From positions 62,001 to 126,000 of the IMG/VR virus record IMGVR_UViG_3300032242_000723: a stretch of DNA of 64,000 nucleotides; one strand, given 5' to 3'. Under the pieces are notes generated by a model. The model made no database searches and had not been told where the DNA came from. It worked only from the letters and a program-made list of their open reading frames with translations. The position numbers were made by a program, and so were the translations under genes. Positions 12,707 to 55,027 of this stretch are shown here, piece by piece (position 1 is the stretch's first letter; the number at the start of each line of letters is the position of its first letter).

Positions 12707-12774
12707 TGCTGATGCTCTCCAAAGCGTTAGAGTAGTTGGAGATTCCCGTCTCGCGAACTACATCTTTATTTATC
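12707..12774 (-). promoter_or_regulatory. conserved endonuclease leader copy 1 (TAAATA motif + hairpin + RBS)
   Basis: GATAAATAAAGATGTAGTTCGCGAGACGGGAATCTCCAACTACTCTAACGCTTTGGAGAGCATCAGCAATG on minus strand. Confidence 0.8.
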
Positions 12775-12837
12775 TTTTTGCTTGACTTGCGCTGATAACC
12801 TTGTTATATTGTCATTATAAACTTTAAAGGAATAGCA

Positions 12838-14178
12838 ATGTCATCGTCGTGGATCAAACAACTCAACGAAAGCGACTCTCGCTTACATAAAGAAAACATT
12901 ATCGGACAGGCGCTTACTGCTGCGTTGTTAGGCAATGAGAATGCTAACTTCTGTCTTGAAATGCTACAACTCTGTTACGACACATATATTACATTTGGTG
13001 TGAGGCAGATTCCAGAAACGGTTGGTATCGTTGATGCGGAAAATCCCTGGTCAGAGTTCATTGATCTTACTGTAAGTCTCGGCACTCGTGAACTTACCGG
13101 ACATGATGCTCGTGATGCTATTCAATCATTATCTGAACGATTTGACAGTGATGAGTGGAACATCTTCCTTGCTCCTATCTTGCGTCGGGACATGCGTTGC
13201 GGCATCTCTTCAACTACGATCAACAAGGTCTGCAAGAATACGAAGTATGCTATCGCAGTGTTCGGTTGCCAGCTTGCGACCAACAGTGAGGGTCGCCCGG
13301 AGATGAAGGGCGTTAAGCGTCTTGAACCTAAGTTGGATGGTGTCCGTGTTCTAATGGCTGTTCAAATGACTCAGTTCGGTCCAAAAATCGTGACCAGCTA
13401 TAGTCGTAACGGTAAACAGTTTGAGAACTTCAAGCACATTGAAAAGCAAATTAGTGATAACTTTACCCGATTGATCGGTGCGATGGGAAGCAGTGAATAC
13501 TTTGGGTCAGGCATAGTGTTCGATGGTGAGATCGTAGGCAACAGTTTTCAAGAACTGATGCGGCAGGCTCGGCGCAAGAATGATGTTCAAAATGATGACA
13601 GTGTTTATCATATCTTTGACATGATTCCTATGGATGACTTTAAGCGTGGTCACTGGAATGCACAGTTGTCTAAGCGTCTTTTGCTACTACGCCGCATGAA
13701 TACTGTCATTGACGCGATGCCTAATGTGGAACTTCTTCCTCACCTTGAAGTCAACCTTAACTCACCACATGGCGTCACTCATCTTGAAACTTACGCTAAT
13801 GAGATGGTCGCAGCAGGGTTTGAAGGCATTATGATCAAGGACCTTGACGCTCCATATGAATGCAAGCGTAATACATCCTGGATGAAGTATAAACCCGTAC
13901 ATGACTATGATCTCACTGTAATCGGAGTTGAACCTGGTACTGGAAAGAACAAGGGAAGAATGGGAGCATTAGTCTGCGAAGGTGTTGATGATGGAAAACA
14001 CATCGTGGTTAATGTGGGCAGCGGATTTACGGATGTTGAGCGACAAGAATATTGGGATAACCGAGATGATGTGGTCGGTCGTTCGGCCGTAGTTATGGCA
14101 GATGCGATAACACTTAATCAAAGCGGAACCTATAGTTTGCGGTTTCCCAGGTTTAAATCATTTAGGTACGATAAGTGA
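12838..14178 (+). CDS. lig: ATP-dependent DNA ligase
   Basis: EPKLDGVR (motif I), FDGEI, HIFDM, EGIMIK, WMKYKP, SLRFPRF. Confidence 0.95.
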   Translation: MSSSWIKQLNESDSRLHKENIIGQALTAALLGNENANFCLEMLQLCYDTYITFGVRQIPETVGIVDAENPWSEFIDLTVSLGTRELTGHDARDAIQSLSERFDSDEWNIFLAPILRRDMRCGISSTTINKVCKNTKYAIAVFGCQLATNSEGRPEMKGVKRLEPKLDGVRVLMAVQMTQFGPKIVTSYSRNGKQFENFKHIEKQISDNFTRLIGAMGSSEYFGSGIVFDGEIVGNSFQELMRQARRKNDVQNDDSVYHIFDMIPMDDFKRGHWNAQLSKRLLLLRRMNTVIDAMPNVELLPHLEVNLNSPHGVTHLETYANEMVAAGFEGIMIKDLDAPYECKRNTSWMKYKPVHDYDLTVIGVEPGTGKNKGRMGALVCEGVDDGKHIVVNVGSGFTDVERQEYWDNRDDVVGRSAVVMADAITLNQSGTYSLRFPRFKSFRYDK

Positions 14179-14858
14179 CCTTCATAAACAACCTGTAATA
14201 CTTCATCGGAAAGTTGGTACCAGCCAGACTTTATATTAGTTTGCTTATCTAACTCTTGTCGTATTTTTCTTGGTATAGTTTTTCTTAACTGATTGAGTGT
14301 TTTAACAATGTCTCTGTTGCCTTTTGCGATGTTTTTACTTTTTATCTTGTCTAGTGTTTCTTTCTTTATTTCAACTCCGCAGTTATCAAAGTGATGACGG
14401 TGCATAACAGAAACGCCACCGCGTTTGCCGCAATGCGGGCACTCAACTATTGGTTTTGGTTTACGTTTTTTGGCTTTGATGTATTCGGGTTGTGGTTTAT
14501 CTTTATTACCCGGAGAGACGCCGGTTCTTGCTTTAGATGACGCTAAGGGACAAATAGAACGACCATCACTTTCGTTCAAATAATCCTTTCGGCTAATAAC
14601 CTTCATCTTCCGAAGGATGCGGTGCTCCCAGATTCTGGCTTTATTTACCGCATTATTGCCTGAAAAGATTTTTCTTATTTGTATTATATCGGGGTTGCCA
14701 TGTTCTTTGACATATTCTGCTACATTTACGCTTGAAGTAAAGTATGTTTTCCAAAGATCATTTGGGTGGCAGTCTTTTGCATACCTAACCCCGTAGTATT
14801 TCATTCCTGTAGTAGACCAGGTAATATAATAGGTATAAGGAATATTATAAATAGTCAT
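14130..14858 (-). CDS. GIY-YIG-type endonuclease with Zn finger
   Basis: YTYYI-x-YYGVR, YFTSS, WEHRIL, YLNES; CPHCGKRGGVSVMHRHHFDNC; ATG 14858 follows the conserved leader. Confidence 0.75.
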   Translation of the reverse strand: MTIYNIPYTYYITWSTTGMKYYGVRYAKDCHPNDLWKTYFTSSVNVAEYVKEHGNPDIIQIRKIFSGNNAVNKARIWEHRILRKMKVISRKDYLNESDGRSICPLASSKARTGVSPGNKDKPQPEYIKAKKRKPKPIVECPHCGKRGGVSVMHRHHFDNCGVEIKKETLDKIKSKNIAKGNRDIVKTLNQLRKTIPRKIRQELDKQTNIKSGWYQLSDEVLQVVYEGHLSYLNDLNLGNRKL

Positions 14859-14925
14859 GCTGATGCTCCTGTAAGCGTTAGAGTAGTTGGGAATCCCCAT
14901 TCCGTGAACTACATCTTTATTTATC
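14859..14925 (-). promoter_or_regulatory. conserved endonuclease leader copy 2
   Basis: GATAAATAAAGATGTAGTTCACGGAATGGGGATTCCCAACTACTCTAACGCTTACAGGAGCATCAGCATG. Confidence 0.8.
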
Positions 14926-14988
14926 TTTTTGATTGACATATCTGTTTAAACCTGTTATAAAGAAGAAACATGGGAGACATTAAAAATA

Positions 14989-15279
14989 ATGAACATTAAA
15001 CTTAAAGCAGCATTATACACACTTATACCTACTGTTATCTTGGCAACATGGTTGTTTTCATTGGCAACTTGGTATGTACAAACAGTGTTATTCACTATAG
15101 TTTTTCTTTGGTTGGTAGCACTGCCATTCTGTATTTACAATCTCATACTCATTAATCTAAAGAGTAAGCAGGATAGTGCAGATTTTCAACAAACTTTTAA
15201 AGCAGCAATGGATGCAAATAAGAGAGCAAGTGACAAGGTAAAAGAGATTCTTGAGTCAAGTAAAGAGAGAAAAAGATGA
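14989..15279 (+). CDS. membrane protein (two hydrophobic segments)
   Basis: Hydrophobic N-terminal half; TTGACA promoter and GGGAG RBS upstream. Confidence 0.6.
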   Translation: MNIKLKAALYTLIPTVILATWLFSLATWYVQTVLFTIVFLWLVALPFCIYNLILINLKSKQDSADFQQTFKAAMDANKRASDKVKEILESSKERKR

Positions 15280-15452
15280 ATAACTTAGATACATTTGAAG
15301 AAAATCCACAGCGTTGCGAAGGATGCGGGTTCATTACTGAAACTCGTCCATATGGTCTTCATCACGAAGAAATCTGTGTTGATTGTGCTATGAAAGACAT
15401 GCCAGTAAGTTTGATCCGCATGAAGGAGCATATGCTAGGCTATGACGAATGA
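15276..15452 (+). CDS. 58-aa CxxC...CxxC zinc-finger protein (not in ORF track)
   Basis: RCEGCG...ICVDCA; ATGA overlaps on both ends. Confidence 0.6.
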   Translation: MNNLDTFEENPQRCEGCGFITETRPYGLHHEEICVDCAMKDMPVSLIRMKEHMLGYDE

Positions 15453-15688
15453 ACGACGATGAAGTAGAGTTTGATGACTACCATACCCCTACCTTAGAAG
15501 AGGTAAATCGGTATCTGGGAAAGTCTCATACATTTGAAGATAATGACAAGATTGAAGTCACACAGATTAGGCGCAGAGATAGTGGTTGGTGGGTAACATA
15601 TAACATCTATCAGGGTCCAGGTATTCCTCGTAGACTATTAATGGTATACGAAGAGTTTGTAAGAGAGTTCGGCCATCTATTTGATTAA
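15449..15688 (+). CDS. hypothetical protein
   Basis: 79-aa ORF, ATGA coupled. Confidence 0.6.
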   Translation: MNDDEVEFDDYHTPTLEEVNRYLGKSHTFEDNDKIEVTQIRRRDSGWWVTYNIYQGPGIPRRLLMVYEEFVREFGHLFD

Positions 15689-15714
15689 CAACACAGGAAA
15701 GACTAAATAAATAC

Positions 15715-17154
15715 ATGACTTTACTTAGGAAAATATTTAGTTTTGCAACATTGACACTGCTGGTAGCGATCATGCTTAGCAGTGTTGCTGCATGGTATTC
15801 TATCCAGGGCTTAATGGCGATCTTTGCGGCAGCAGTGTTCCCTATCATTGTCATGGGTGGGTCACTTGAGTTCGCTAAGGTCGTGACTACGGTATGGTTG
15901 CATAAGTACTGGAATCGTGCTGACTGGGTGATGAAGGCATATCTTGTGCCTGCTGTTGTTGCACTTGCACTATTAACAAGTATGGGGATTTTCGGTTTCC
16001 TCAGCAAGGCGCACAGTGATCAATCGTTGATCAGTGGTGATGTTGGTGCCAAGATCGCAGTTTATGATCAAAAGATTGAGACTGCTAACGCTAACATCGT
16101 CGCCAATCGCAAAGCATTAGAGCAAATGGATGCTCAAGTTGATCAGTTGCTTGGTCGTACTGCTGATGACAAGGGTGCAAATCGTGCTGTCCAGGTTCGT
16201 AAGCAACAAAAATCTGAACGGGCAAGGCTAAATCAAGAGATACAAGATGACCAGGCATTGATAGCCAAGACTAACGAAGAAGCGGCTCCTGTTCGTGCTG
16301 AAGTGCGTAAGGTCGAGGCTGAAGTTGGACCAATCAAGTATATCGCTGCGTTGATCTACGGTGATAATCCTAATGGTGATCTATTAGAACGTGCTGTACG
16401 CTGGGTGATCATTCTTATCGTTCTGGTATTTGACCCACTTGCACTAACGCTCATGCTCGCTGCACAAAGCAGTTACAAGTGGCTTGAGGAAGATGAAGAA
16501 GCCGAAAAGTTAGATGGTTTCAAAGAGGCATTGGCTGAGGCCTTTGCACCAACAGAGGAGGTAGCAGATGATGGACCTATACAAGAAGATGATGCTCAAC
16601 TGGATGACGGAGTGGGAGAACCACTACAAGAAGACGATCTTCCCGGCCCAGTTGAAGATGCTATTGAAGTGGAACAGGTTGAAGACGAATCTAGGTGCGA
16701 AGCCGAAGTATCCGGACCCGAGACCACCGAAAGACCAGTAGTTGACATCCGCACTGAAGGCGTAACATTAGAAGAAACTGAAGATGGTGCATATGTACAG
16801 TTTGAAGGTAAATCTACGAGTAAAGTAGCACTGTTAGGCATGCATCCTGAACTGTTTAGGGCAACAGTTGACGGTGGAAAGCAAGCAAACACTAACTTCG
16901 GTACAGTTTTCCCTACGTTTGCTCAAAAGGGCGATGTCTTCGTAAGAGTTGATATGTTACCAAATCGTGTTTATAAGTTTGATTCAACTAAATGGATTGA
17001 AGTTAACAAGAACACTACGGATTCTTACTTATATGACGATGAATATATTGGTTATCTAGTAAGCAAGATTGATAGCGGTGAATATGATGTTGACTTACTA
17101 TCCGAAAACGAAAGAGTGCAAATAGAGAACTACCTACAGACACAACCCAAGTAA
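15715..17154 (+). CDS. multi-pass membrane protein with coiled coil and acidic cytoplasmic region
   Basis: Three N-terminal TM segments, long helical region, fourth TM WVIILIVLVFDPLAL, D/E-rich tract. Confidence 0.75.
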   Translation: MTLLRKIFSFATLTLLVAIMLSSVAAWYSIQGLMAIFAAAVFPIIVMGGSLEFAKVVTTVWLHKYWNRADWVMKAYLVPAVVALALLTSMGIFGFLSKAHSDQSLISGDVGAKIAVYDQKIETANANIVANRKALEQMDAQVDQLLGRTADDKGANRAVQVRKQQKSERARLNQEIQDDQALIAKTNEEAAPVRAEVRKVEAEVGPIKYIAALIYGDNPNGDLLERAVRWVIILIVLVFDPLALTLMLAAQSSYKWLEEDEEAEKLDGFKEALAEAFAPTEEVADDGPIQEDDAQLDDGVGEPLQEDDLPGPVEDAIEVEQVEDESRCEAEVSGPETTERPVVDIRTEGVTLEETEDGAYVQFEGKSTSKVALLGMHPELFRATVDGGKQANTNFGTVFPTFAQKGDVFVRVDMLPNRVYKFDSTKWIEVNKNTTDSYLYDDEYIGYLVSKIDSGEYDVDLLSENERVQIENYLQTQPK

Positions 17155-17180: not shown

Positions 17181-18350
17181 ATGAACTACTGTTCCTTCTG
17201 CGGAAGCCATAAAGATAAAGTCCGCAAGTTGATTGTGGGTGATGATACTGCGATTTGTAGTGATTGCATTACCTTATGCAACCAACTGATAGAAGAGCGA
17301 GTTCAACAAAGTGTACAAGGTGAGTTTGACGCATATAGTATCAAAGCACATTTGGATGAGCATGTGATTGGTCAAGATTCTGCTAAAGAGGTGATCAGTG
17401 TTGCGATATCAAATCACTATAAACGAATCAACTATCCACCCAAGCATATTGAGATCCAAAAGGGCAATGTGTTATTGATTGGGCCAACTGGTTCTGGTAA
17501 GACATTGCTTGCTCGTGCTGTAGCGAAATATCTAAACGTTCCCTTTGTAGTGGCAGATGCTACTAGCCTGACTGAATCAGGATATGTAGGTGAGGATGTT
17601 GAATCAATGATCTCTACCTTACTATCACTTGCTGACAACGATGTTAGCTTGGCCGAGCGTGGTATCGTGTTCATTGACGAGATTGACAAGATTGCTCGTA
17701 AGAGTGAGAGTGCAAGTCTAACTCGTGATGTAAGCGGCGAAGGTGTGCAACAAGCATTATTGAAACTGGTAGAAGGTACCACTTGCCGCGTAAGTCCTGC
17801 TGGAGTTCGCAAAGGCCCAAACAGTGAGACCGTTGAAGTTAGCACCAAGAACATACTCTTCATAGCAGGTGGAGCCTTTGTTGGCCTTGAAAATATCATA
17901 AAGAGTAGAGTAGGCGGAGCGTCTATAGGATTCAATGCACCGTTGAAGTCTAAGACAAAAACTATTGACTATTCTAATATCGCACCCGGTGATCTTACTA
18001 AGTTTGGAATGATTCCTGAACTGGTTGGTAGATTTACTACGACTATCACATTAGAAGAACTGTCATTAGATCAGTTAGTCTTGGTATTGACTACTGTAAA
18101 AAACAGTTTCATTGAACAATACAAGTACATGTTTGAGATTGATGGTATTCGATTGGTATTTACCGATGAGGCCATTGTAAGAATCGCGCAGAAATGTCTT
18201 GATCTAAAAACAGGTGCTCGTGGATTACATACCGAGATAGAGAAGGTATTAATGCCTCACATGTTCCACATTCACAAGTACTCAAAGAACAAGATAGGCA
18301 AGATCACTATCACTCTTGATCTAGTTGATAATCCAAAATCTTTAGTATAA
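17181..18350 (+). CDS. clpX: ClpX AAA+ unfoldase
   Basis: C4 zinc finger CSFC..ICSDC, Walker A GPTGSGKT, GYVGED pore loop, FIDEIDK, RDVSGEGVQQALLK, IGF loop, TGARGL. Confidence 0.95.
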   Translation: MNYCSFCGSHKDKVRKLIVGDDTAICSDCITLCNQLIEERVQQSVQGEFDAYSIKAHLDEHVIGQDSAKEVISVAISNHYKRINYPPKHIEIQKGNVLLIGPTGSGKTLLARAVAKYLNVPFVVADATSLTESGYVGEDVESMISTLLSLADNDVSLAERGIVFIDEIDKIARKSESASLTRDVSGEGVQQALLKLVEGTTCRVSPAGVRKGPNSETVEVSTKNILFIAGGAFVGLENIIKSRVGGASIGFNAPLKSKTKTIDYSNIAPGDLTKFGMIPELVGRFTTTITLEELSLDQLVLVLTTVKNSFIEQYKYMFEIDGIRLVFTDEAIVRIAQKCLDLKTGARGLHTEIEKVLMPHMFHIHKYSKNKIGKITITLDLVDNPKSLV

Positions 18351-18454: not shown

Positions 18455-18913
18455 ATGACTAATACACAACTACACCTTCGTGCCCTTGACATTCCGTCAA
18501 TCCATAGATTTGCAGTAGGATTCGATTCAATGATCGATGAACTTATGCGAACTAATGCAGAACAACCAAACACTAACTATCCCCCATATAACGTAATCAA
18601 GCACACAGACGACATGTTCACGATTGAACTGGCTGTGGCTGGCTTTGATGAACAAGACATCAAGATCACCGTTGATAAGAATGTTCTCTTAATCAAAGGT
18701 GAACAGCGTCAGGATGTTGGTGAACTGGATCAAGAAGTTGAATACCTACATCGCGGGATTTCAGCACGAAACTTCACACGTTCGTTTAAACTAGCGGACT
18801 ATGTGGAAGTAGTAAACGCTACTGCTAGTAACGGTATCCTCAAGGTCGAACTTGAGAGACAAGTTCCTGAAGCGGCTAAGCCAAAAACTATTCGCATATC
18901 AAGTAATAAGTGA
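18455..18913 (+). CDS. ibpA: small heat shock protein Hsp20 (IbpA-like)
   Basis: [39 protein letters not shown]...NGILKVEL. Confidence 0.95.
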
Positions 18914-19501
18914 TTTACACTTACTAAAGTGAAAGCGTATCATTCCGGGTTTTCCACCTGATTTGAGGCAGTGAGGGCATGTTATTATAATCTTACTAGG
19001 ATTAATCTGTGATTGGAAATTATGAGTACCATTCGCAAATTGTGCCTTTGCTGCCTCTGATTGCGTCATCGGCGGTTTTCGGTCAGTAATCTTTGTGATC
19101 TTCTTCCGAAACTCTGGTGATTGATTTTTTCTGCGATTTGCCTCTGCTATCTTGGTAGAATCTCGTTTAGGTTTACGCATTTTAGCCTTGTGTTCTTCGC
19201 TCAAAGGTCCATATTTAGGATTCTTTTTGGTATGTTTTGAGGCACCATCTCCGCCGTCTGTTTTGTTGATTAGGATTCCTGTACCAAGGTCTTTTCTTCC
19301 GTACCAACGAATCATTCTACGTTCAATCGCAAGGGCACCGGTATTAGTTAGATTACATTCTAAGAATACGATTTTGGATCTATCTTTAGGAACAGAAACG
19401 CCAGGATGCCTAGCATATGCTCTGTTGTCTTTGCCTTTTCCGATATAATAGGGAGTGTTGTCACTTTTGCGTAGGTACGCATATACGTAATAAATAGTCA
19501 T
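18899..19501 (-). CDS. GIY-YIG-type endonuclease with NUMOD3-like linker and Zn finger
   Basis: YYVY-x-[20 protein letters not shown]; [22 protein letters not shown]. Confidence 0.8.
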
Positions 19502-19569
19502 TGCTGATGCTCCTTCAAAGCGTTAGAGTAGTTGGGTGTTAGCGCACCGTGAACTACATCTTTATTTAG
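19502..19569 (-). promoter_or_regulatory. conserved endonuclease leader copy 3
   Basis: CTAAATAAAGATGTAGTTCACGGTGCGCTAACACCCAACTACTCTAACGCTTTGAAGGAGCATCAGCAATG. Confidence 0.8.
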
Positions 19570-19670
19570 TCCAAAACACTTGCTATTCATAACAATAAAT
19601 AGTATAGTAAATCAATAACCCGTGCTTGCAGTCAATAATGGCTGCAATCACACTAACAAGGATCAATAAC

Positions 19671-20877: not shown

Positions 20878-20951
20878 ATAATATTTCTCCTAATAGTCTG
20901 GTTTCTAATAGTATTTATGATAGTATCCGTTTAGATTATAATAAATACATC

Positions 20952-22493
20952 ATGCGTGACATACTTGAAAAACTTGAGACTTTATCCGAAAGCACTGGCC
21001 TAGCTAATCGTAAAGCAGGTGACGTGTTTCGCAATACTGACGGCGATGAGATCACGTTTGATGGTATTGATTTCTACCCTAAAGAAGCAGGTAGATATGA
21101 CAATGAACAGCTAGATCATGCAGTACTTGATATAGGATCAGAAACCGATCATAATCTTAAATGGTTAAACAATCGCACAGGTCGCACTGGCGGATTTGCT
21201 ATTGCAAAGTTTACAGGGAAAGAAGGACCTCTATATTTCGGGCGTTATCTTGAACAGATTAAAGCAGACCCTGTTGATAACTATATTCCTAATCAAATCG
21301 GTGATTATAAACTTGCCAGCAAGGCAGCAGCAAAAGCTCAGTCTGGATTGACCCCACAAGACCTGCTCGTTAATAAGATTGATCTAACAGCGGATGATAT
21401 TCTTGGTCAGCTAGCTGAAACGTTAGGTACCGATAACACTCTTTATGATGTCGCCGCTAAACTAGCTGCAGGTGAGCCGCTTCCCATGACGTTTGATGCA
21501 CCTCCTAACATAAGTTTCTCTGCGTTCCGTGACTACTTTTGCGAGATTCTACAACCAATCGCATTACAAATGGGGCAGTACACGGGCAATGCGGGCGAGG
21601 CTGCTGAAGTCTTCTTAGGTGGAAGTTTTCAAAACACTCTTATCTCGTTTGATGACACGAAGACAGCTGGTCTCAGTGACAGCATTATGACTAACGAAGA
21701 AGGCAAATACATCAAGGTTAGTACTAAGGGCGGTCTCGGCGCGATGGCAAGTACGGCTAATCTAGTCAAGAGTGCTGACGAGCTATCACAAACCGAAAAC
21801 GGTAGAAAGTTAATGGAGAAGTACTCCGAAACTATTGAAATACTACGTGAGATCAAGGACCGAGGGCAGGCACTTGCACCTATATACTTAGGTTTAAAGT
21901 ATGATATTATCGACAGAGAAGATGCTAAGAAAATCATATCGTTAAAGAACGTTAATCCTCAGCCAATGAGTGAGTTAGATAACTTAGGGTTATCAGACAA
22001 TCTGTTAAAGTTAGCCAAAATCAGAAAAACATCTAATCAAGATAGTGTTAACTTCTATTACCTATTACTTGCTGGATTGGCTCAGGAAGCTGCGGACCAA
22101 GTTAATGAACACACTGACTTTAGCAGTACGGCTGCTGACATCTTGAACAACGGGGCACTCATTCAAGTCTATACTAAAGCCAGCGAGAACAAAGGACAAT
22201 GGACTCTAAAAGAGTTTGAAACTGTATACCCAGGTGAAAGCATTAAGGGTGTTTATCTGTCGGCAGCGAAAACGTATTATAGTACTGGTATTAAGGGTAA
22301 CTTCACATTCAAGATCGACAAGGGCAAGGGTCTACCTGAAGATAAACCTGAGTCTAGTATTGGTAGAGAGAAACGAACAGACACCGCTCCCGAGTTTGCT
22401 AAAAAGGCTGGCGACATTGCATTAGGTAGAGATAAACCAAAAAGCAAGGAACCATCTTCAATGGGTAATGTAGGTAGAGAAAAACGCAAATAG
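20952..22493 (+). CDS. large late protein, possible PD-(D/E)xK-like domain
   Basis: ATAAATA directly upstream of ATG 20952; LSDSIM...IKVSTKGG. Confidence 0.65.
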   Translation: MRDILEKLETLSESTGLANRKAGDVFRNTDGDEITFDGIDFYPKEAGRYDNEQLDHAVLDIGSETDHNLKWLNNRTGRTGGFAIAKFTGKEGPLYFGRYLEQIKADPVDNYIPNQIGDYKLASKAAAKAQSGLTPQDLLVNKIDLTADDILGQLAETLGTDNTLYDVAAKLAAGEPLPMTFDAPPNISFSAFRDYFCEILQPIALQMGQYTGNAGEAAEVFLGGSFQNTLISFDDTKTAGLSDSIMTNEEGKYIKVSTKGGLGAMASTANLVKSADELSQTENGRKLMEKYSETIEILREIKDRGQALAPIYLGLKYDIIDREDAKKIISLKNVNPQPMSELDNLGLSDNLLKLAKIRKTSNQDSVNFYYLLLAGLAQEAADQVNEHTDFSSTAADILNNGALIQVYTKASENKGQWTLKEFETVYPGESIKGVYLSAAKTYYSTGIKGNFTFKIDKGKGLPEDKPESSIGREKRTDTAPEFAKKAGDIALGRDKPKSKEPSSMGNVGREKRK

Positions 22494-40320: not shown

Positions 40321-40389
40321 AATGTTTTTAATGCTCAAGGCCACATAAATAATAGTATGACACATTCTATCACGATAGCCTCAGTTTAG

Positions 40390-41255: not shown

Positions 41256-41269
41256 CGATAAATACTCTT

Positions 41270-41824
41270 ATGTTAGAGTTTATCAAGGTACTTGAAGGTA
41301 AAAGCAAATCTACTGATTTGGAAATAATCCCACTGAACTTCACCAAGCGTGATGTCTCATCCGTTATGAGCGGAGCAACTCTTGACCTGCATTATGATAA
41401 GTTGGCTAAGGGTTATGCTAAGCGTTATAATGAAAAAGAAGGTGATCCGGACTTCAACTATGCGGGTGCGTTCTTACATAATCTTTGGTTCCCACAGTTT
41501 AGAAAAGTCGCATTAAACAATACACCAAACGGTCCTATGAAGGGCTTCATAGATAAGCACTATGGTTCTTTTGACAGTTTCAAGGACAAGTTTGAAGAGA
41601 TAGCGATGAAGATACAAGGCTCAGGTTGGGTCTATCTTGCTTACGATGGTAACATCAAAACAATCAAGAATCATGAAGTCAAGAGTGACATTCTACTGTT
41701 AGTGGACTGGTGGGAGCACTCGTTTGTGCTGGATTATGGCTCAGACAAAAAGGCCTACTTGCGTAACCTTTGGAAGATCATTAACTGGAATGTGATTTCT
41801 ACCAGGTGGGGCAAGTCACTATGA
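41270..41824 (+). CDS. sod: Fe/Mn superoxide dismutase
   Basis: LHY (His ligand 1), FLHN (His 2), QGSGW, DWWEH (Asp/His ligands). Confidence 0.85.
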   Translation: MLEFIKVLEGKSKSTDLEIIPLNFTKRDVSSVMSGATLDLHYDKLAKGYAKRYNEKEGDPDFNYAGAFLHNLWFPQFRKVALNNTPNGPMKGFIDKHYGSFDSFKDKFEEIAMKIQGSGWVYLAYDGNIKTIKNHEVKSDILLLVDWWEHSFVLDYGSDKKAYLRNLWKIINWNVISTRWGKSL

Positions 41825-43773: not shown

Positions 43774-44112
43774 ATGATAAATACTGATATGATCACATTA
43801 ACAGTATCAGCACAAAATAAAGTCGCTAAGGTGCTAGCAGAAGAAATACCAAATGCAAGACTTAGACTATATGTCTCTGGCAAAGGTTGTGCTGGGATGA
43901 CATATGGCTTTGCTATAGCAGAAGAACTTGAAGAAGGTGATACTGAGATTCAATCAGGTCCAGTTGTCGTAGTGATTGATCCAGAATCAATGCCCTATTT
44001 AAAAGGTGCAATCGTTGATTTTAAAGAGGATTTAACTGGTTCTCGCTTTGCTATAATCAACCCTAATGCCAAGTCCAGTTGTGGTTGCGGAGATAGTTTC
44101 CAGCCTTATTGA
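43774..44112 (+). CDS. iscA: A-type Fe-S carrier (IscA/ErpA, HesB family)
   Basis: GKGCAGMTY, VDF, NPNAKSSCGCGDSF. Confidence 0.9.
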   Translation: MINTDMITLTVSAQNKVAKVLAEEIPNARLRLYVSGKGCAGMTYGFAIAEELEEGDTEIQSGPVVVVIDPESMPYLKGAIVDFKEDLTGSRFAIINPNAKSSCGCGDSFQPY

Positions 44113-50535: not shown

Positions 50536-50636
50536 TATATAATTATATCCTAATATATTGAAGATTGTGCGACATTGCACTTTACTAATATAGAGCAAAG
50601 GGTATATAAGTCAAATGCTTATATACCCAAAATGTT

Positions 50637-50804: not shown

Positions 50805-50928
50805 TTCTTTTTCTCCTTAAAATGCAAAGACTAGAACGGTGAGTAGGATTACCCAACCGATTAAATTACCCGTAAGCCAAAAGCCTACATTCTTACTATA
50901 AGCCCAATTCTTGATCTTGTCAAGCATA

Positions 50929-51279: not shown

Positions 51280-51316
51280 CTGAGTAACTCCGTTTGTGTG
51301 TGTCTGTCTATGATTC

Positions 51317-51345
51317 AATATAGCGAAACGGGCAAACGAAGTCAA
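51317..51345 (-). promoter_or_regulatory. early promoter cassette
   Basis: TTGACT-17-TATATT then GAATCATAGACAGACACACACAAACGGAGTTACTCAGATG. Confidence 0.85.
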
Positions 51346-51607
51346 CCGAAATCGTGCCTATTTGTCATTTTTATTTGTGGCGATAAGGTACCATACGAAT
51401 CCAAGTACAGTAAGTGCTAAGATCGTAAATATGAAATCAATCGTCATTTAATAAGTCCTATCTCTCTATATCGGTTTTCTTCTTCAAGATCGTGATTAAT
51501 GTAGTTCATCTTCCAATCATATTGTTCTTGGGTGATTTCACCTGATACTAACTTAGCATCATAATCGTCCTTGATTTGAGTGTACCAAACTGGAAGTTGT
51601 TCCTCGT

Positions 51608-51865
51608 TCATAGTCCAACTCCAAAATGTTCTTTGATCAGGTCGCGGTCAAGCTTGGCCTGCATTTTTCTATCATCGTTCCAAGAACTCTTATACTGCTG
51701 TTGACAGATGTCTACACAGTCCTGGACGAGCAATCGTGCGAACTTTTCATAGTCAAACTCGTATGAGTCTGCGTAACTTAGCCTGCTATCTTTTGGCAGA
51801 GGTAAAAACCCCTTACCTGTTTGTTGCCAGCATCTATCAGCAAGTTCTTCAATACGCTTGTTCAT
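51608..51865 (-). CDS. HFGV-array small protein 3
   Basis: MNKRIEELA...EKFARLLVQDC...IKEHFGVGL. Confidence 0.7.
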   Translation of the reverse strand: MNKRIEELADRCWQQTGKGFLPLPKDSRLSYADSYEFDYEKFARLLVQDCVDICQQQYKSSWNDDRKMQAKLDRDLIKEHFGVGL

Positions 51866-52122
51866 AGTTTTACTCCGAAATGTTTTTGGATCGCCCAAGC
51901 TCTATTTTCACAGGCTTGATCCCAGTAACTACTATCCCAATGTTCAGCATTATTGATGCCAGCCTTGACAATATCAATACATTCCTTCGCGATCAACTCT
52001 GCGAACTTTTCGACATCTAACTTTTCATCAGCAACAAACAACTTGTTGGATTTACAGTAGTCGTCTGCTTGATCAGCAGGAACAATACATTTCCAGATCA
52101 GTTCTACCATACGCTCGTTCAT
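51862..52122 (-). CDS. HFGV-array small protein 2
   Basis: MNERMVEL...EKFAELIAKEC...IQKHFGVKL. Confidence 0.7.
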   Translation of the reverse strand: MNERMVELIWKCIVPADQADDYCKSNKLFVADEKLDVEKFAELIAKECIDIVKAGINNAEHWDSSYWDQACENRAWAIQKHFGVKL

Positions 52123-52355
52123 TATTCAACTCCGAAATGGCGTGTCATTCGTTCAGCGCACAACTCTGCTTGATTAGAAGACGAAAAGATATTTGTATTT
52201 TTGACATACTTGGCGCATTCTTTCACAATCAACTCTGCGAACAGTTCCAAATCCTTTTGCCCGACTACCATGGCATGTGGATCCTCTTCAGGACCATAGT
52301 CATATAAACACATCAAGCCAGCTTGTTCGGCAAGTTCTTTGATTTTGTCGTTCAT
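52122..52355 (-). CDS. HFGV-array small protein 1
   Basis: MNDKIKELA...ELFAELIVKEC...MTRHFGVE. Confidence 0.7.
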   Translation of the reverse strand: MNDKIKELAEQAGLMCLYDYGPEEDPHAMVVGQKDLELFAELIVKECAKYVKNTNIFSSSNQAELCAERMTRHFGVE

Positions 52356-52356
52356 A

Positions 52357-52853
52357 GGAAAAACCTCGTTTCAGAAACTATAACTTATGATGCCAATCGC
52401 ATAGTATGTAGAGCGGGCCTATTTTCGCGTACAAACTCACCGTTCTTATACCATACCAGACGACCATGAGCATAAACCAGAGCAGGACCGTCCTCACGGT
52501 GAAGCTTGCCGTTTACGAACCATCGCTGAGTTCCGTCTGCTAACTCAACTGCAGGGCCATCCTCGCGATGTTCTACGCCGTGATTGAACCACATTTTACC
52601 AACATTCTCTATCTCAACGGCGGGGCCATCTTCGCGATGGTACTGGTTATTGTCATCCCAATATTGATGTGTAATATTGCCCTTATACCCGATAGATCGA
52701 ATATATTTCGCGTTCGGATCAGGTGAACTGTCTGCGTAGTTATCAGTAACGATGGTCATCTTGATTTTCCATTTCACATAATGATTGTTTCAGAAAGTTC
52801 TTAAACCGTTGTTTGTTCACATGGAAAAACCTCGTTTCAGAAACTATAACTTA
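52357..52853. repeat. 31-bp direct repeat at 52357-52387 and 52823-52853
   Basis: GGAAAAACCTCGTTTCAGAAACTATAACTTA in both places. Confidence 0.85.
52385..52777 (-). CDS. protein with three HREDGPA repeats
   Basis: YHREDGPAVE, EHREDGPAVE, LHREDGPALV. Confidence 0.75.
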   Translation of the reverse strand: MKWKIKMTIVTDNYADSSPDPNAKYIRSIGYKGNITHQYWDDNNQYHREDGPAVEIENVGKMWFNHGVEHREDGPAVELADGTQRWFVNGKLHREDGPALVYAHGRLVWYKNGEFVRENRPALHTMRLAS

Positions 52854-52881
52854 ATATAGAACCGAAACGAGGCAAAGTCAA
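52853..52881 (-). promoter_or_regulatory. early sigma70-type promoter
   Basis: TTGACT-17-TATATT. Confidence 0.75.
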
Positions 52882-52894
52882 CCATTATTTTTTG

Positions 52895-53524
52895 TTATCT
52901 GTAGAAAATGTGGTCACCAATCTTAGCGAGCCGTGCTCTATTTTTCCACTTTGGACGTATTTGATATTCATGGAAATACAAAGCGTGTTCCATACCCTTT
53001 ACCCGTTTACCTTCTAGGACTTCACGAGCAATGTTCATACTTTCATCCCATTGTGAGTTGTTTGGATGTGACCAACGCTTGTTACGATCATTGGCCCACG
53101 AAAACTGATTGCGAGCAAAAACGACCGAACAAATGTCACCTGCAAACTTGGGACTTGTTGTACGATTAAGGGTAACTTGAGCAACTGCGATCTTACCAAC
53201 GCTGGACTGATTTGCCGCTTCATGGTAGATGTTCTTTGCTAAACAGAAAAGTTCTAGGTTAGTATGTGATATCTTTTCTGTAGTATTGACAACGGTTAGG
53301 AACCTTGCGTTATCATATGTGGTCTTAAGACTTTGTTGTAGTATTTGCTCAGGAGAGATTGTACGGACTTTTGGAAGAGGTACACTAAACTGAGCAACTG
53401 TAGTAATCTCTTCAGCACGGGACTGTGATGGAGAGTATTGCCAGAAGAGAAACACAAAGAGTACGGCAAATAACACTCTATATGGGTTGATTAGCGAACT
53501 AACCGAGTTCTGAGAAATATACAT
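52895..53524 (-). CDS. SleB-like cell wall hydrolase (Hydrolase_2)
   Basis: CLAKNIYHEA, AVAQVTLNR, ICSVV...QFSW, ALYFH, IGDHIFY; N-terminal TM. Confidence 0.88.
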   Translation of the reverse strand: MYISQNSVSSLINPYRVLFAVLFVFLFWQYSPSQSRAEEITTVAQFSVPLPKVRTISPEQILQQSLKTTYDNARFLTVVNTTEKISHTNLELFCLAKNIYHEAANQSSVGKIAVAQVTLNRTTSPKFAGDICSVVFARNQFSWANDRNKRWSHPNNSQWDESMNIAREVLEGKRVKGMEHALYFHEYQIRPKWKNRARLAKIGDHIFYR

Positions 53525-53794
53525 TTTATTTCCTTAATTGGGCCGCTGATCAATAGCATAAGGCGTAGTTATATGCATTTAGCAGTAGCACTTCCACTGA
53601 TATTCAATGAATGGGAAAACCGTATCTAGGATACGGTTCTTTGTGTCCCTCATATAGTATCATAGGCAAACAATCAACTGAAATATCAGTTAATCAAGCT
53701 ATTCATCAATTGAATTGACGTTTAGCCTTTTATGTCGGCTTTCTCACGACCGACACAATAGAGTATTTAGCAGTAGTTAGCCGCTAAAGAATAC

Positions 53795-54070
53795 TTAGTT
53801 TTCCCAGTCGGCAACTTCCAAATCAATGGAGCTAACTGAATCATATGAGATACTACGCCATGCCCTGATCTCAAGATCAAAGACGGCAATAGAAGTTTCA
53901 GACTTCTTCTTAGCAGGCTTATCTTCGTTCACTACCTGAGCAGGAAGCAAGTCTGGCTTAAGCGTACACTTCATCACTCGTTGAGTACCGTCCTTCTTTG
54001 TAAAGGTTACAGTTGCAACATTATTTTTAAGCAGTTCAGGAAGTAATGCTTGTGTCGTGAGTTCATCCAT
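53795..54070 (-). CDS. WYL-like / DUF2693-type small protein
   Basis: VTFTKKDGTQRVMKCTL...VFDLE..AWRS. Confidence 0.7.
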   Translation of the reverse strand: MDELTTQALLPELLKNNVATVTFTKKDGTQRVMKCTLKPDLLPAQVVNEDKPAKKKSETSIAVFDLEIRAWRSISYDSVSSIDLEVADWEN

Positions 54071-54608
54071 GATCAACGGCCTTTGCTAACTCAATCTCTT
54101 CAGCCAACTTAGGTAGTTCACGCTCTAATAGCTGACTGATGTATTGGTTAAACGTGATATCAAGTGCATGTGATTGCTTAGCGATGAACAGGATAAGATC
54201 ATCTGGAAGATCAATCTCTACCTGCACCCGCTTGTCAAAGTCAAACTTTCCGTCAAACATATTTCGTGCCTTAGACAAGAAATCATCTTCAACTTCAAGG
54301 TCAATCCATTCAATATCGTCAAACGCAGTCTTAGGATTGAAGCCACGCTTAACTGATTCTGCATCGTGTGCTTCTTTCCACTCAGGATTCATCCAGCGAT
54401 AAACCAATGCCGGGTCCGTTTCAGCACCAGGTGCAACATCAACCTTGACTTCATAAATAGTTTGATCAATATATGAATAAACGGCCGAAATCTCGGCATA
54501 TTCGCTTGAAAGCGTCATGCACCTAGCATCGGGATAACACTTCCACAAAAACTCGCAACCATCAGTGATACGATAATCAAAAGTCTTTAACAGTGTTTCT
54601 AACTTCAT
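54063..54608 (-). CDS. hypothetical phage protein
   Basis: AAGGAG RBS before ATG 54608; YRITDG.EF.W.CY. Confidence 0.65.
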   Translation of the reverse strand: MKLETLLKTFDYRITDGCEFLWKCYPDARCMTLSSEYAEISAVYSYIDQTIYEVKVDVAPGAETDPALVYRWMNPEWKEAHDAESVKRGFNPKTAFDDIEWIDLEVEDDFLSKARNMFDGKFDFDKRVQVEIDLPDDLILFIAKQSHALDITFNQYISQLLERELPKLAEEIELAKAVDHG

Positions 54609-54665
54609 CTTATTCTCCTTAGTGTTCATTGTATGTCATATCAGTGTGAATGTCAACTGAAAAGG

Positions 54666-54893
54666 TTACTTCTTCAATAGATACATTGTTACCTTTGGTC
54701 CGTCAACCTTGACAACATTCTTTGAGTAGTAGTTATTGTGGTAAGCCTTGCCTAAAGGGGTGACACCAATCAGTTTGTTGTGCATTCTTGTCACCGTACC
54801 TACATGCATATCTCTTCCAACAGAGAAGGCAACATAATCACCCATTTTAATCTGTGTACCAAGCAAATCGTGATGAACGGGTTCAGGCTTCAT
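54666..54893 (-). CDS. small SH3/KOW-like hypothetical protein
   Basis: AAGGAG RBS; DLLG..I..GDYVAF...GTV. Confidence 0.55.
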   Translation of the reverse strand: MKPEPVHHDLLGTQIKMGDYVAFSVGRDMHVGTVTRMHNKLIGVTPLGKAYHNNYYSKNVVKVDGPKVTMYLLKK

Positions 54894-54956
54894 GTTATTC
54901 TCCTTGTGATCATTAGACTCATCCTACACTAGTTAGGTGAAGATGTCAAACAAAAA

Positions 54957-55027
54957 GATAAATAAAAGTGTAGTTCGCGGAGGTGAGATTCCCAACTACT
55001 CTAACGCTTATAAGGAGCAATCAGCAA
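54957..55027 (+). promoter_or_regulatory. conserved endonuclease leader copy 4
   Basis: GATAAATAAAAGTGTAGTTCGCGGAGGTGAGATTCCCAACTACTCTAACGCTTATAAGGAGCAATCAGCAAATG. Confidence 0.8.

What the first reader, a model, noticed from the sequence alone, without database searches (positions are those of the whole stretch)
12707..55027. Conserved ~70-nt leader with a covarying hairpin in front of four divergent GIY-YIG/Zn-finger genes
Seen: four copies (12707-12774, 14859-14925, 19502-19569 on -; 54957-55027 on +) of TAAATAAA..TGTAGTT-c[ag]c-stem-loop-c-AACTAC-TCTAACGCT-n6/7-AGCATCAGC-A-ATG. The outer stem GTAGTT/AACTAC is invariant; the inner stem changes but always pairs (GAGA/TCTC, GGAAT/ATTCC, GGTG/CACC, GGAG/TTCC); a second GCT/AGC hairpin encloses or overlaps the GGAG SD. 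The nuclease domains downstream differ strongly but all proteins carry a C[PE]HC...H...C finger. Established: T4 homing endonuclease genes use late promoters and RBS-masking hairpins, but there the hairpin is gene-specific and disrupted in the late transcript; here it lies downstream of the TAAATA motif. Inference: a cis-regulatory RNA (possibly bound by the shared Zn finger) or the conserved end of a mobile-element family that carries interchangeable nucleases.
Basis: partly seen in the sequence, partly recalled or inferred. Interest (0 to 1): 0.8.

Follow-up and report, generated by a model that had tools for sequence, protein, structure and literature searches.

The report
Antisense RNA module fronting homing endonucleases
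The four repeats are real copies of a widespread, undescribed 85-base cassette that sits in front of selfish nuclease genes in uncultured phages, and its conserved folded structure lies on the opposite strand, which points to a small antisense RNA that probably throttles the nuclease.

Summary
The four copies are real (covariance-model E about 1e-22 each) and are the only ones in the window. They belong to a family of more than 200 distinct copies in IMG/VR phage contigs. The family is absent from Rfam 15, from 50,697 cultured-phage genomes and from all but 2 of 185,579 species genomes.

Every copy sits directly in front of a small free-standing homing endonuclease gene. These genes are GIY-YIG, HNH or TnsA-like, and only about 40% carry the Cys/His finger.

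The decisive result is the strand:
- Non-Watson-Crick pairs are A·C on the sense strand, which read as G·U on the antisense strand.
- The "single-stranded" invariant blocks TCTAACGCT and AGCATCAGC form an 8-bp helix only on the antisense strand.
- On 104 distinct antisense sequences, 98.8% of cells pair and 17 of 19 pairs show compensatory changes.

A second TAAATA box, the reverse complement of TATTTA in codons 2-4, is held at nucleotide level whatever the reading frame. It lies 5 nt before the structured segment, which ends in a hairpin and a U-rich tail.

Best reading (confidence 0.5): a portable sense/antisense module. It encodes a roughly 65-nt cis-antisense RNA complementary to the whole endonuclease 5' UTR. 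No RNA data exist.

The parts
12692..12777 (+). Copy 1 of the module, read on the strand antisense to the endonuclease gene. ATAAATA box 12695-12701; predicted RNA about 12708-12773; helix P2' 12709-12716 with 12723-12730; hairpin P1' 12732-12761; U-rich tail 12762-12773.
   Evidence: R2 hit of 91.2 bits. The fold is -19.6 kcal/mol with z -3.36, against -12.4 and z -0.24 for the sense strand. Box found.
12146..12706 (-). Homing endonuclease gene 1 (186 aa, GIY-YIG-like N-terminus MTIYLYKKTHN..., C-terminal CPHC..H..C finger). Its own TAAATA box is at 12767-12772 (-), and the mRNA is predicted to start at G12761.
   Evidence: PHROG 314, E 5e-13.
14844..14928 (+). Copy 2, antisense strand. ATAAATA box 14847-14853; predicted RNA about 14859-14924; P2' 14860-14867 with 14874-14881; P1' 14883-14912; U-rich tail 14913-14931.
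   Evidence: R2 hit of 89.1 bits. Fold -18.2 kcal/mol, z -2.99. Sequence read.
14130..14858 (-). Homing endonuclease gene 2 (242 aa, SegE-like GIY-YIG, finger at residues 139-160). Its last 49 nt overlap the 3' end of the DNA ligase gene on the other strand. TAAATA box at 14918-14923 (-).
   Evidence: Synteny with the endonuclease-free allele L211.
19487..19573 (+). Copy 3, antisense strand. ATAAATA box 19490-19496; predicted RNA about 19503-19569; P1' 19528-19557.
   Evidence: R2 hit of 94.2 bits. Fold -20.0 kcal/mol, z -2.46.
18899..19501 (-). Homing endonuclease gene 3 (200 aa, GIY-YIG motif YVYAYL...PYYIGKG, C-terminal finger). TAAATA box at 19563-19568 (-).
   Evidence: weak match to GIY-YIG structures, E 0.07.
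54954..55040 (-). Copy 4, antisense strand. The box is the reverse complement of TATTTA at 55031-55036 and reads TTAAATA here. Predicted RNA about 55025 down to 54958; P1' 54970-54999. This is the weakest copy.
   Evidence: R2 hit of 73.5 bits. Fold -13.1 kcal/mol, z -0.94.
55028..55622 (+). Homing endonuclease gene 4, broken. The GIY-YIG N-terminus (61 codons) stops at 55211-55213. The finger-bearing C-terminal part is in the +1 frame, open from 55257 to 55622. TAAATA box at 54959-54964 (+).
   Evidence: PHROG 655 for the C-terminal piece.
12782..12810 (+). Sigma-70-like promoter (TTGACT-17-TATATT). It lies back-to-back with copy 1 and points at the ligase gene (12838-14178).
14933..14961 (+). 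Sigma-70-like promoter (TTGACA-17-TATAAA). It lies back-to-back with copy 2 and points at ORF 14989-15279.

Best explanation
The element is a self-contained, portable expression module that travels with free-standing homing endonuclease genes. Two T4-type late-promoter boxes (TAAATA) face each other about 75 bp apart. The outer box starts the endonuclease mRNA at the G of GUAGUU, so the 62-nt segment between the boxes is the mRNA's 5' UTR. The inner box lies in codons 2-4 of the endonuclease ORF on the other strand. It starts, at the G of GCUGAUG, a roughly 65-nt RNA that is perfectly complementary to that whole UTR.

This antisense RNA folds into two hairpins. P2' is 8 bp with two conserved G·U pairs, and its loop is the complement of the Shine-Dalgarno sequence. 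P1' has 11 pairs and two bulged G, and it is followed by a U-rich tail that is the complement of the outer promoter box, so it probably acts as the terminator. By pairing with the UTR, and through head-on transcription, the RNA most likely keeps synthesis of a self-damaging nuclease low. SymR does this for symE and Sar does it for P22 ant. Because all the control sits upstream of codon 5, any nuclease ORF placed behind the module inherits it.

Shown: the family, its exclusive link to endonuclease genes, the structure, its strand, nucleotide-level selection on the inner box, and the promoter-to-start spacing in these phages. Inferred: that the inner box fires, that the RNA ends at the U tail, and that the effect is repression.
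For: 1. Strand of the structure. In helix P1 the non-Watson-Crick pairs are A·C 33 against G·U 3 on the sense strand. Among distinct variants the outer stem has A·C 13 against G·U 2, and the R-Y pair is G-C 106, A-U 13, A·C 17 and G·U 1. A·C on the sense strand is G·U on the antisense strand.

2. Second helix. The invariant blocks CTAACGCT and AGCATCAG form an 8-bp helix on the antisense strand only. On the sense strand 2 of its 8 positions never pair, giving 75% pairing. On the antisense strand pairing is 100%.

3. Prediction test. Copies were selected only for a changed base at P2 position 7, and 40 of 41 carry the compensating partner.

4. Larger alignment. In 104 distinct antisense sequences 98.8% of cells pair and 17 of 19 pairs have double changes. 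The covariation score is 0.539 against 0.199 in shuffles (0 of 500 reach it), and slid controls pair at 29-52%.

5. Folding energy. The antisense RNAs of copies 1-3 have z -3.4, -3.0 and -2.5. The sense UTRs have z -0.2 to -1.7.

6. Inner box. In 59 distinct M-x-I-Y proteins codon 2 encodes 9 different amino acids but ends in T in 59 of 59 (background 32%). The Ile codon is ATT in 58 of 59 (background 40%). The next codon follows background usage. The hexamer is kept in three reading-frame offsets. The start codon slides so that the CAGC-to-box spacing stays at 4-6 nt in 157 of 161 copies and at exactly 5 nt in 116.

7. TAAATA is a working start signal in these phages. An ATG lies 4-5 nt after the box at 12 of 50 boxes in the window. 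In 2.45 Mb of related loci the counts are 102 and 146 against a background of about 40, and the control hexamers are flat. The same 5-nt spacing precedes GUAGUU in 74 of 91 copies and GCUG.

8. Tail. The 10 nt after P1' contain 5-7 U in 151 of 166 copies.

9. The element comes with the endonuclease gene. The endonuclease-free ligase locus L211 has the next gene 10 nt after the ligase stop and no hairpin.
Against: - No transcript data exist for either strand.
- The simple terminator scan did not call P1'. The stem is interrupted by bulges and the U run begins 2 nt after it.
- The base before the inner box is G in about 27% of copies, against 1% for the outer box, so the two boxes may not be equivalent.
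- Both promoters are of the same class, so the timing logic is unclear.
- A pure cis-antisense pair needs no primary-sequence conservation. Yet a G·U pair is invariant in 104 of 104 and the two bulged G are invariant. This hints at a further partner, protein or RNA, that the model does not name.
- The TAAATA/TATTTA pair could instead close a three-way junction in longer transcripts.
- Alignment A5 was fitted to the model, and the sequences are related, so the counts are not independent events.
Confidence: 0.5

Rival explanations
1. One reading: the element is a sense-strand cis-regulatory leader. P1 stabilises the 5' end of the late mRNA and P2 partly masks the Shine-Dalgarno sequence. In read-through transcripts TAAATA pairs with TATTTA and closes off the initiation region.
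For: The late-promoter box, the SD and the start codon are all present, and the mRNA 5' end falls at the base of P1. The long-range TAAATA:TATTTA helix appears in the minimum-energy fold of 47 of 90 read-through versions. The same principle is documented for I-TevI, segB and mobE (PMC2988022).
Against: The wobble asymmetry favours the other strand, with A·C 33 against G·U 3. The invariant blocks form only a 3-bp helix on the sense strand. Sense folds are no better than shuffles, with z -0.2 to -1.7. Twelve copies combine TAAATA with TACTTA, which gives an A·C in the sense long-range helix. In most loci the upstream neighbour is on the other strand, so there is no sense read-through.
Confidence: 0.12
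2. Insulator only. The antisense-strand hairpins and U tail are a terminator that stops the neighbours' transcription after it has run backwards through the inserted endonuclease gene. A fresh promoter then restarts the next gene, and no discrete small RNA is made.
For: Both neighbours are antisense to the endonuclease gene in 37 of about 91 loci. 25% of loci have a strong sigma-70-like promoter whose -35 lies 9-11 nt beyond the U tail, against under 1% in shuffles. In the window the insertion separates ligase from genes that are adjacent in L211.
Against: The same element, equally conserved, occurs where both neighbours are co-oriented with the endonuclease gene (15 loci) and in mixed contexts. 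A terminator explains neither the nucleotide-level selection on TATTTA nor the conserved P2' with its invariant G·U.
Confidence: 0.15
3. The structure forms in single-stranded DNA of the bottom strand, where G·T is tolerated. It would then be a recognition site for recombination, replication or the homing process itself.
For: Covariation cannot tell DNA from RNA. Extrahelical bases flanking a single pair are reminiscent, as a resemblance recalled from memory, of strand-specific DNA hairpin sites such as integron attC. Locus L217 shows a duplicated target flank around the cassette.
Against: Homing by double-strand-break repair needs no hairpin. The element is bracketed by promoter-like and terminator-like signals at the spacing these phages use for transcription. 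Three unrelated nuclease families would have to share one DNA-structure partner.
Confidence: 0.08
4. The antisense RNA exists but its main role is not cis repression. It might be a trans-acting or protein-binding RNA, for example one that silences the leaders of other or incoming endonuclease cassettes, or one that protects the mRNA from RNase E by duplex formation.
For: Primary sequence is far more conserved than cis pairing requires. It includes an invariant G·U and two invariant bulged G. All copies in a genome share the P2' region while the top of P1' differs. Antisense RNA that protects mRNA during phage infection is documented (PMC3113571).
Against: No candidate partner has been identified. 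The conserved loop is simply the complement of the SD.
Confidence: 0.12

Closest known systems
Late-promoter plus RNA-hairpin control of T-even homing endonuclease genes (I-TevI, I-TevII, I-TevIII, segB, Aeh1 mobE; review PMC2988022)
   Same: A TATAAATA-type late promoter lies immediately upstream of a homing endonuclease ORF, next to RNA structure at the ribosome binding site. The purpose is to limit expression of a nuclease gene.
   Different: In T-even phages each hairpin is gene-specific. It acts on the sense RNA, sequesters the RBS, and is truncated in the late transcript. Here one sequence family serves hundreds of genes from at least three nuclease superfamilies. The hairpins lie downstream of the box, the SD sits in a loop, and the selected fold is on the antisense strand.
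SymR/symE of E. coli (PMC1891008); also P22 sar/ant and lambda OOP (listed in PMC12197685)
   Same: Each is a short cis-antisense RNA (SymR 77 nt, Sar 68/69 nt, OOP 77 nt) encoded opposite its target. [quoted passage not shown] That is the architecture inferred here.
   Different: Those RNAs are experimentally shown, use sigma-70 promoters, and are single loci. Here the RNA is only inferred. The promoter box is the phage late type, the terminator overlaps the target's own promoter, and the module is mobile and multi-copy.
CfrI antisense RNA of cyanophage S-PM2 (Millard et al. 2010, as summarised in PMC2984593 and PMC12197685)
   Same: It is an antisense RNA in a T4-like phage that runs opposite a free-standing homing endonuclease gene (F-CphI).
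   Different: CfrI is about 225 nt, links the endonuclease gene to psbA, and is locus-specific with unknown function. There is no shared sequence or structure family, and none of the 50,697 cultured-phage genomes, S-PM2-type phages included, matches this element.
Hairpins and two complementary conserved motifs upstream of GIY-YIG and Vsr-like endonuclease genes in 'fractured genes' of GOS metagenomes (Dassa et al. 2009, PMC2677866)
   Same: These are metagenomic phage loci, some from freshwater Lake Gatun. Hairpins lie in the endonuclease 5' UTR, often with TATAAATA, and are shared by different endonuclease families. The invading element brings its own control signals. This may be the same element or a relative.
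   Different: The authors interpreted the hairpins as sense-strand translational hairpins. They did no covariation or strand analysis and proposed no antisense promoter. The motif sequences are in a supplementary figure that is not held, so identity could not be checked.
PeSL composite promoter-terminator motifs of T4-like phages (PMC2839356, PMC4122927)
   Same: They are small conserved regulatory cassettes, a stem-loop plus a promoter, that flank variable genes and serve as points of exchange between otherwise unrelated sequences.
   Different: PeSLs pair an early sigma-70 promoter with a terminator and flank many kinds of gene. This element uses late-type boxes, is tied exclusively to endonuclease genes, and extends into the ORF. 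Only 25% of loci have an adjacent sigma-70-like promoter, and it is not conserved in sequence.

Membership tests
T4-type late-promoter / RBS-sequestering hairpin control of homing endonuclease genes | A TATAAATA-like late promoter immediately upstream of the endonuclease ORF | tested here: met
   TAAATA is present in 148 of 161 copies, 5 nt before the first structured base in 74 of 91. The box is followed by ATG at 4-5 nt far above background in the window and in related loci.
T4-type late-promoter / RBS-sequestering hairpin control of homing endonuclease genes | A sense-RNA hairpin pairs the SD or AUG, and the late start site lies inside it so that late transcripts are open | tested here: not met
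   Both hairpins lie downstream of the predicted start. The SD is in the loop and 3' edge of a 3-bp sense helix. The only candidate is the weak TAAATA:TATTTA helix, present in 47 of 90 minimum-energy folds. It carries an A·C in the 12 copies that have TACTTA.
Cis-antisense small RNA regulator (SymR/symE type) | Conserved RNA structure on the strand opposite the target's 5' end | tested here: met
   Pairing is 98.8% on the antisense strand and 17 of 19 pairs are compensatory. On the sense strand two positions of P2 never pair.
Cis-antisense small RNA regulator (SymR/symE type) | Own promoter on the opposite strand, embedded in the target ORF | tested here: inconclusive
   The hexamer is under nucleotide-level selection and lies at the spacing these phages use between box and start. 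Promoter activity itself cannot be shown by sequence.
Cis-antisense small RNA regulator (SymR/symE type) | Defined 3' end (intrinsic terminator) | tested here: inconclusive
   A hairpin is followed by a tail with 5-7 U in 10 nt in 151 of 166 copies. The simple terminator scan does not call it.
Cis-antisense small RNA regulator (SymR/symE type) | The RNA is detectable and changes expression of the target | not testable with these tools
   The phages are uncultured and no transcript data are available.
Any described RNA family (Rfam 15) | A covariance-model match at or near the gathering score, on either strand | tested here: not met
   The whole window at gathering threshold gives only 3 tRNAs. 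Copy 1 with flanks at E up to 10 gives only chance-level hits to unrelated families.
PeSL promoter-terminator cassette | An early sigma-70 promoter joined to a stem-loop, flanking diverse variable ORFs | tested here: not met
   A strong adjacent sigma-70-like promoter is present in only 23 of 92 loci, on the other strand, and is not conserved in sequence. The element precedes endonuclease genes only.
Free-standing homing endonuclease genes (the downstream proteins) | A nuclease domain of a homing-endonuclease superfamily in a small ORF that is absent from related genomes at the same site | tested here: met
   PHROG 314/655. Pfam domains HNH_3, HNH, GIY-YIG, SegE_GIY-YIG, TnsA-like and NUMOD3. 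Presence/absence polymorphism next to the ligase gene. A duplicated target flank in L217. Cleavage activity was not tested.

The most novel reading that the evidence does not exclude
The antisense RNA is not just a local brake. It is a family-wide, trans-acting 'anti-endonuclease' RNA. Because all cassettes share the P2'/SD region, a resident cassette, even one with a dead nuclease such as copy 4, could silence the endonucleases of co-infecting phages. The variable top of P1' would set specificity groups. That would make it an RNA-based immunity and competition system among selfish DNA elements. The invariant G·U and bulged G would mark a shared protein partner.
Probability: 0.12. Interest if true: 0.9.

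Novelty: new variant of a known kind. Interest (0 to 1): 0.8.

Why it matters
Homing endonuclease genes are the main selfish elements of large phages. How they are kept from harming their carrier has so far been worked out only gene by gene in T-even phages. This element would be the first sequence-and-structure family shared across hundreds of endonuclease genes and at least three nuclease superfamilies. It would also be the first case in which such genes carry their own antisense RNA.

If confirmed, it gives a ready marker for finding free-standing endonuclease genes and their insertion boundaries in metagenomes. It adds a new RNA family for Rfam. It explains how unrelated nucleases become mobile cassettes, by docking behind one portable control unit. 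It also provides a compact, symmetric promoter/terminator design that can be tested directly with reporters.

Tried and rejected
- Rfam at gathering and permissive thresholds gave no relevant family.
- The literature holds no paper with the exact motif strings. The Dassa 2009 supplement is not held.
- Cultured phages gave no match, neither megablast of 8 kb nor blastn of the leader.
- Zn-finger autoregulation is rejected as a general explanation. The finger is absent from about 60% of downstream proteins.
- A conserved 3' end of the cassette was sought, and no shared nucleotide motif was found around the stop codons.
- P1 as a resident terminator into which endonuclease genes insert is rejected. 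The endonuclease-free allele L211 has no hairpin.
- The sense long-range TAAATA:TATTTA pairing is weak (about -4.6 kcal/mol on average) and is contradicted by the TACTTA variants. It is kept only as a sub-alternative, a closing helix in longer antisense transcripts.
- An antisense small ORF is rejected. The frame and length change with loop length (3, 7 and 11 codons in copies 2, 1 and 3), so it is not conserved.
- The NTG-TAG start-stop at the mRNA 5' end was noted but not pursued.
- Ascertainment bias as the cause of the A·C excess was checked. All outer-stem variants come from a scan whose seed excluded P1. The 3' strand of P2 was unconstrained in the first scan, yet it reads AGCAUCAG in essentially all 91 copies, with one exception at each of two positions.
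- Host and taxonomy remain unclear. ClpX gives only about 50% hits to jumbo phages Atu_ph07 and Phosso. The two genome hits are Bacteroidota MAG contigs. The look-up of encoding contigs returned no habitat data.

Full report
**Observation.** The 15-mer AACTACTCTAACGCT occurs four times exactly. With up to 3 mismatches allowed it gives 6 hits against 1.4 expected. Two covariance models built later find these four sites and no others in the window, at 94-101 bits and 73-94 bits. Three downstream ORFs (12146-12706, 14130-14858 and 18899-19501, all on the minus strand) are intact small proteins with GIY-YIG-like N-termini and a C-terminal CPHC...H..C finger. They match the PHROG homing-endonuclease families 314 and 655. 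The fourth (55028 onward, plus strand) is broken. Frame 1 stops at 55211-55213, and the finger-bearing part is in the +1 frame, open only from 55257. All four genes lie antisense to their neighbours, and their 3' ends overlap the 3' ends of convergent genes.

**A large, undescribed family.**
Of these, 107 carry the full element.
- A third scan, for a deliberately altered base, gave 75 more stretches.
- Together these yield 211 distinct copies.
- There is no match in Rfam 15 on either strand and none in 50,697 cultured-phage genomes.
- Only two of 185,579 species genomes match, both contigs in Bacteroidota MAGs.
- No paper contains the motif strings. Dassa et al. 2009 (PMC2677866) reported hairpins, TATAAATA and two complementary motifs upstream of GIY-YIG and Vsr-like endonuclease genes in GOS 'fractured genes'. 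That may be the same element, but the sequences are not held.

**What follows the element.** Every copy is followed, at a fixed few bases, by a small ORF.
- The 150 complete products fall into three large N-terminal clusters and eight small ones. Two of the large clusters are GIY-YIG-like and one is HNH.
- Pfam over 100 of them gives NUMOD3 21, HNH_3 14, HNH 7, HNH_5 5, GIY-YIG 4, SegE_GIY-YIG 3, TnsA-like 2 and DUF7487 2.
- The Cys/His finger is present in about 40%.

So the element is tied to free-standing homing endonuclease genes of at least three nuclease superfamilies, and not to the finger.

**The TAAATA box is a start signal in these phages.** In the window TAAATA-N3-6-ATG occurs 17 times against 5.1 expected, and about ten of these sites are at ORF starts with no Shine-Dalgarno sequence. 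The spacing profile peaks sharply at 4-5 nt in the window (12 of 50 boxes outside the elements). In 2.45 Mb of related loci the counts are 102 and 146 against a background of about 40, and the control hexamers are flat. From established knowledge of T4 late promoters (TATAAATA centred near -10) this means that transcripts start 5-6 nt after the box and that many late genes here are leaderless. In the element the box lies 5 nt before GTAGTT in 74 of 91 copies. The endonuclease mRNA should therefore begin at the base of hairpin P1.

**Structure, and on which strand.**
- On the first, seed-biased alignment the inner stem of P1 covaries without mismatches.
- With a seed outside P1, the 'invariant' outer stem shows at least 35 complementary variants, such as GTGAGT/ACTCAC, GTAGGT/ACCTAC and GTCCGT/ACGGAC.
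- The R of the CRC motif pairs with the Y before the 3' arm, and a bulged C lies on either side of that pair.
- The non-Watson-Crick pairs are lopsided. On the sense strand A·C outnumbers G·U 33 to 3. Among distinct variants the outer stem has 13 against 2, and R-Y is G-C 106, A-U 13, A·C 17 and G·U 1. A·C on one strand is G·U on the other, so the helix is under selection on the antisense strand.
- Folding agrees. The antisense 66-nt RNAs of copies 1-3 fold at -18 to -20 kcal/mol (z -3.4, -3.0 and -2.5). The sense UTRs fold at -12 to -14 kcal/mol (z -0.2 to -1.7).
- The antisense fold reveals an 8-bp helix, CUGAUGCU with AGCGUUAG, containing two G·U pairs. It is made from exactly the two blocks that looked single-stranded and invariant on the sense strand. 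On the sense strand two of its positions never pair, giving 75%. On the antisense strand pairing is 100%.
- As a prediction test I fetched copies selected only for a changed base at position 7 of this helix. The partner had changed to match in 40 of 41: GTC/GAC 24, GTT/AAC 16, GAT/ATC 2 and GGT/ACC 1.
- A model of the antisense strand aligned 121 hits, 104 of them distinct. 98.8% of cells pair and 17 of 19 pairs show changes on both sides. The covariation score is 0.539 against 0.199 in shuffles (0 of 500 reach it), and slid controls pair at 29-52%. One G·U is invariant in 104 of 104.
- Ascertainment does not explain the asymmetry. The outer-stem variants come from a seed that excludes P1. The 3' strand of P2 was free in the first scan.

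**The second box.** Conservation continues past the ATG through TATTTA, the reverse complement of TAAATA.
- The hexamer is kept in three reading-frame offsets (M-x-I-Y, M-I-F, M-Y-L). The start codon slides so that the CAGC-to-box spacing stays at 4-6 nt in 157 of 161 copies and at exactly 5 nt in 116.
- In 59 distinct M-x-I-Y proteins codon 2 encodes nine different amino acids but ends in T in 59 of 59 (background 32%).
- In the same proteins the Ile codon is ATT in 58 of 59 (background 40%), while the following Tyr codon follows background usage.

Selection is therefore on the hexamer as DNA or RNA and not on the protein. On the antisense strand the hexamer is a TAAATA box 5 nt before the invariant G of GCUGAUG. 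That is the same geometry as the outer box and as the leaderless genes.

**Resulting architecture (inference).** On the antisense strand the order is:
- the box;
- 5 nt;
- G, followed by P2', whose loop is the complement of the SD;
- a single A;
- P1', with a G-Y-G bulge motif;
- ACUUUUAUUUAU, which is the complement of the endonuclease gene's own promoter box. This tail has 5-7 U in its first 10 nt in 151 of 166 copies.

This is the layout of a promoter, a 65-nt RNA with two hairpins, and a terminator. The RNA would be perfectly complementary to the whole 5' UTR of the endonuclease mRNA, from its first base to the CAGC just before the AUG. The closest worked-out analogue is SymR/symE. [quoted passage not shown] P22 Sar and lambda OOP are of the same kind (PMC12197685). 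I therefore propose a cis-antisense brake on a potentially self-damaging nuclease, packaged so that any nuclease ORF placed behind it is controlled.

**Context.**
- Both neighbours are antisense to the endonuclease gene in 37 loci, and both are co-oriented with it in 15. Where the upstream gene is co-oriented, its stop codon lies in TAAATAA.
- 23 of 92 loci have a strong sigma-70-like promoter on the other strand, with its -35 usually 9-11 nt beyond the U tail. The rate in shuffles is under 1%. The window has such promoters at 12782-12810 and 14933-14961.
- Ligase homologues at 61-73% identity lack both flanking cassettes. In L211 the next gene starts 10 nt after the ligase stop, with no hairpin, so the element arrives with the endonuclease gene.
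- In L217 the cassette is flanked by a second copy of the last 28 ligase codons.

The hairpin and tail may therefore also insulate neighbouring transcription. This cannot be the whole story, because the element is equally conserved in co-oriented contexts and a terminator does not need the inner box or P2'.

**What remains open.**
- No RNA has been observed.
- The simple terminator scan does not call P1'.
- The base before the inner box is less constrained than before the outer one.
- Both boxes are of the same temporal class.
- The invariant G·U and the bulged G suggest a partner that a pure cis-antisense model does not need.
- A single-stranded DNA role cannot be excluded by covariation.
- The sign of the effect is inferred by analogy. 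Antisense RNA can also protect an mRNA (PMC3113571).

**Verdict.** It is wrong about the strand, the invariance of the outer stem and the Zn finger. The element is a new, widespread RNA-structure family. Mechanistically it is most like known cis-antisense regulators, and by context it is most like T-even endonuclease control regions, so I rate it a new variant of a known kind with high interest.

Noticed in passing
window 6818-6830(-), 6851-6863(+), 15704-15717(+), 20942-20954(+), 40346-40359(+), 41259-41272(+), 43778-43791(+), 58988-59001(-), 59513-59525(-), 62549-62562(-), 62767-62781(-): Many genes of this phage start 4-5 nt after an ATAAATA box and have no Shine-Dalgarno sequence, so they are apparently leaderless late mRNAs. 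The same spacing peak is seen across 2.45 Mb of related phage contigs. The endonuclease genes, by contrast, carry a classical GGAG leader.
   Followed up: partly
window 55028-55622 (+): The fourth endonuclease gene is a pseudogene. Frame 1 stops at 55211-55213 and the C-terminal finger part is in the +1 frame, open only from 55257. Its module is still recognisable but is the weakest of the four (TTAAATA box, antisense fold z -0.94).
   Followed up: partly
window 14130-14178, 18899-18913 and 55615-55622: Each endonuclease ORF runs into the 3' end of the convergent neighbouring gene (ligase, ORF 18455-18913 and ORF 55615-56214). For gene 2, comparison with L211 shows that the last 16 codons are simply the antisense of conserved ligase codons.
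   Followed up: partly
L217:1-2100: An endonuclease cassette sits downstream of an intact ligase gene and is followed by a second, diverged copy of the last 28 ligase codons. This is a duplicated target flank, as expected if the cassette moves with a piece of its donor's flank.
   Followed up: no
window 12782-12810 (+) and 14933-14961 (+); 23 of 92 related loci: Near-consensus sigma-70-type promoters lie back-to-back with the module, with the -35 usually 9-11 nt from the TAAATA box. They point at the neighbouring gene. It is unclear whether they are brought in by the cassette or were resident.
   Followed up: partly
window 14989-15279 (+): A 96-aa ORF with its own promoter and SD is part of the roughly 1.1-kb insertion relative to the endonuclease-free locus L211, together with endonuclease gene 2. 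Its function is unknown.
   Followed up: no
window 12761-12763, 14912-14914 and 19557-19559 (-), and family-wide: The two bases before GTAGTT are nearly always NT with N = G, A or T (G 62, A 21, T 7, C 1; T 90 of 91). The predicted mRNA 5' end therefore reads GTG, ATG or TTG followed at once by TAG, a start-stop pair. This may be chance or a start-site preference.
   Followed up: no
window 60042-60280 (-): A cluster of three tRNA genes (Rfam tRNA, 55-77 bits).
   Followed up: no
window 17181-18350 (+): A full-length ClpX-like ATPase with an N-terminal C4 zinc finger (Pfam AAA_2 and zf-C4_ClpX). Its best phage relatives, at about 50% identity, are the jumbo phages Atu_ph07 and Phosso. The window equals part of a 333-kb IMG/VR contig.
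   Followed up: partly
L120 and L121 (GTDB genome contigs): The only two hits in 185,579 species genomes are contigs binned into Bacteroidota MAGs, one an uncultured Bacteroidetes bin and the other Haliscomenobacter sp.. This may hint at the host, or it may be a binning artefact. The sigma-70-like promoters in the window argue for caution.
   Followed up: no
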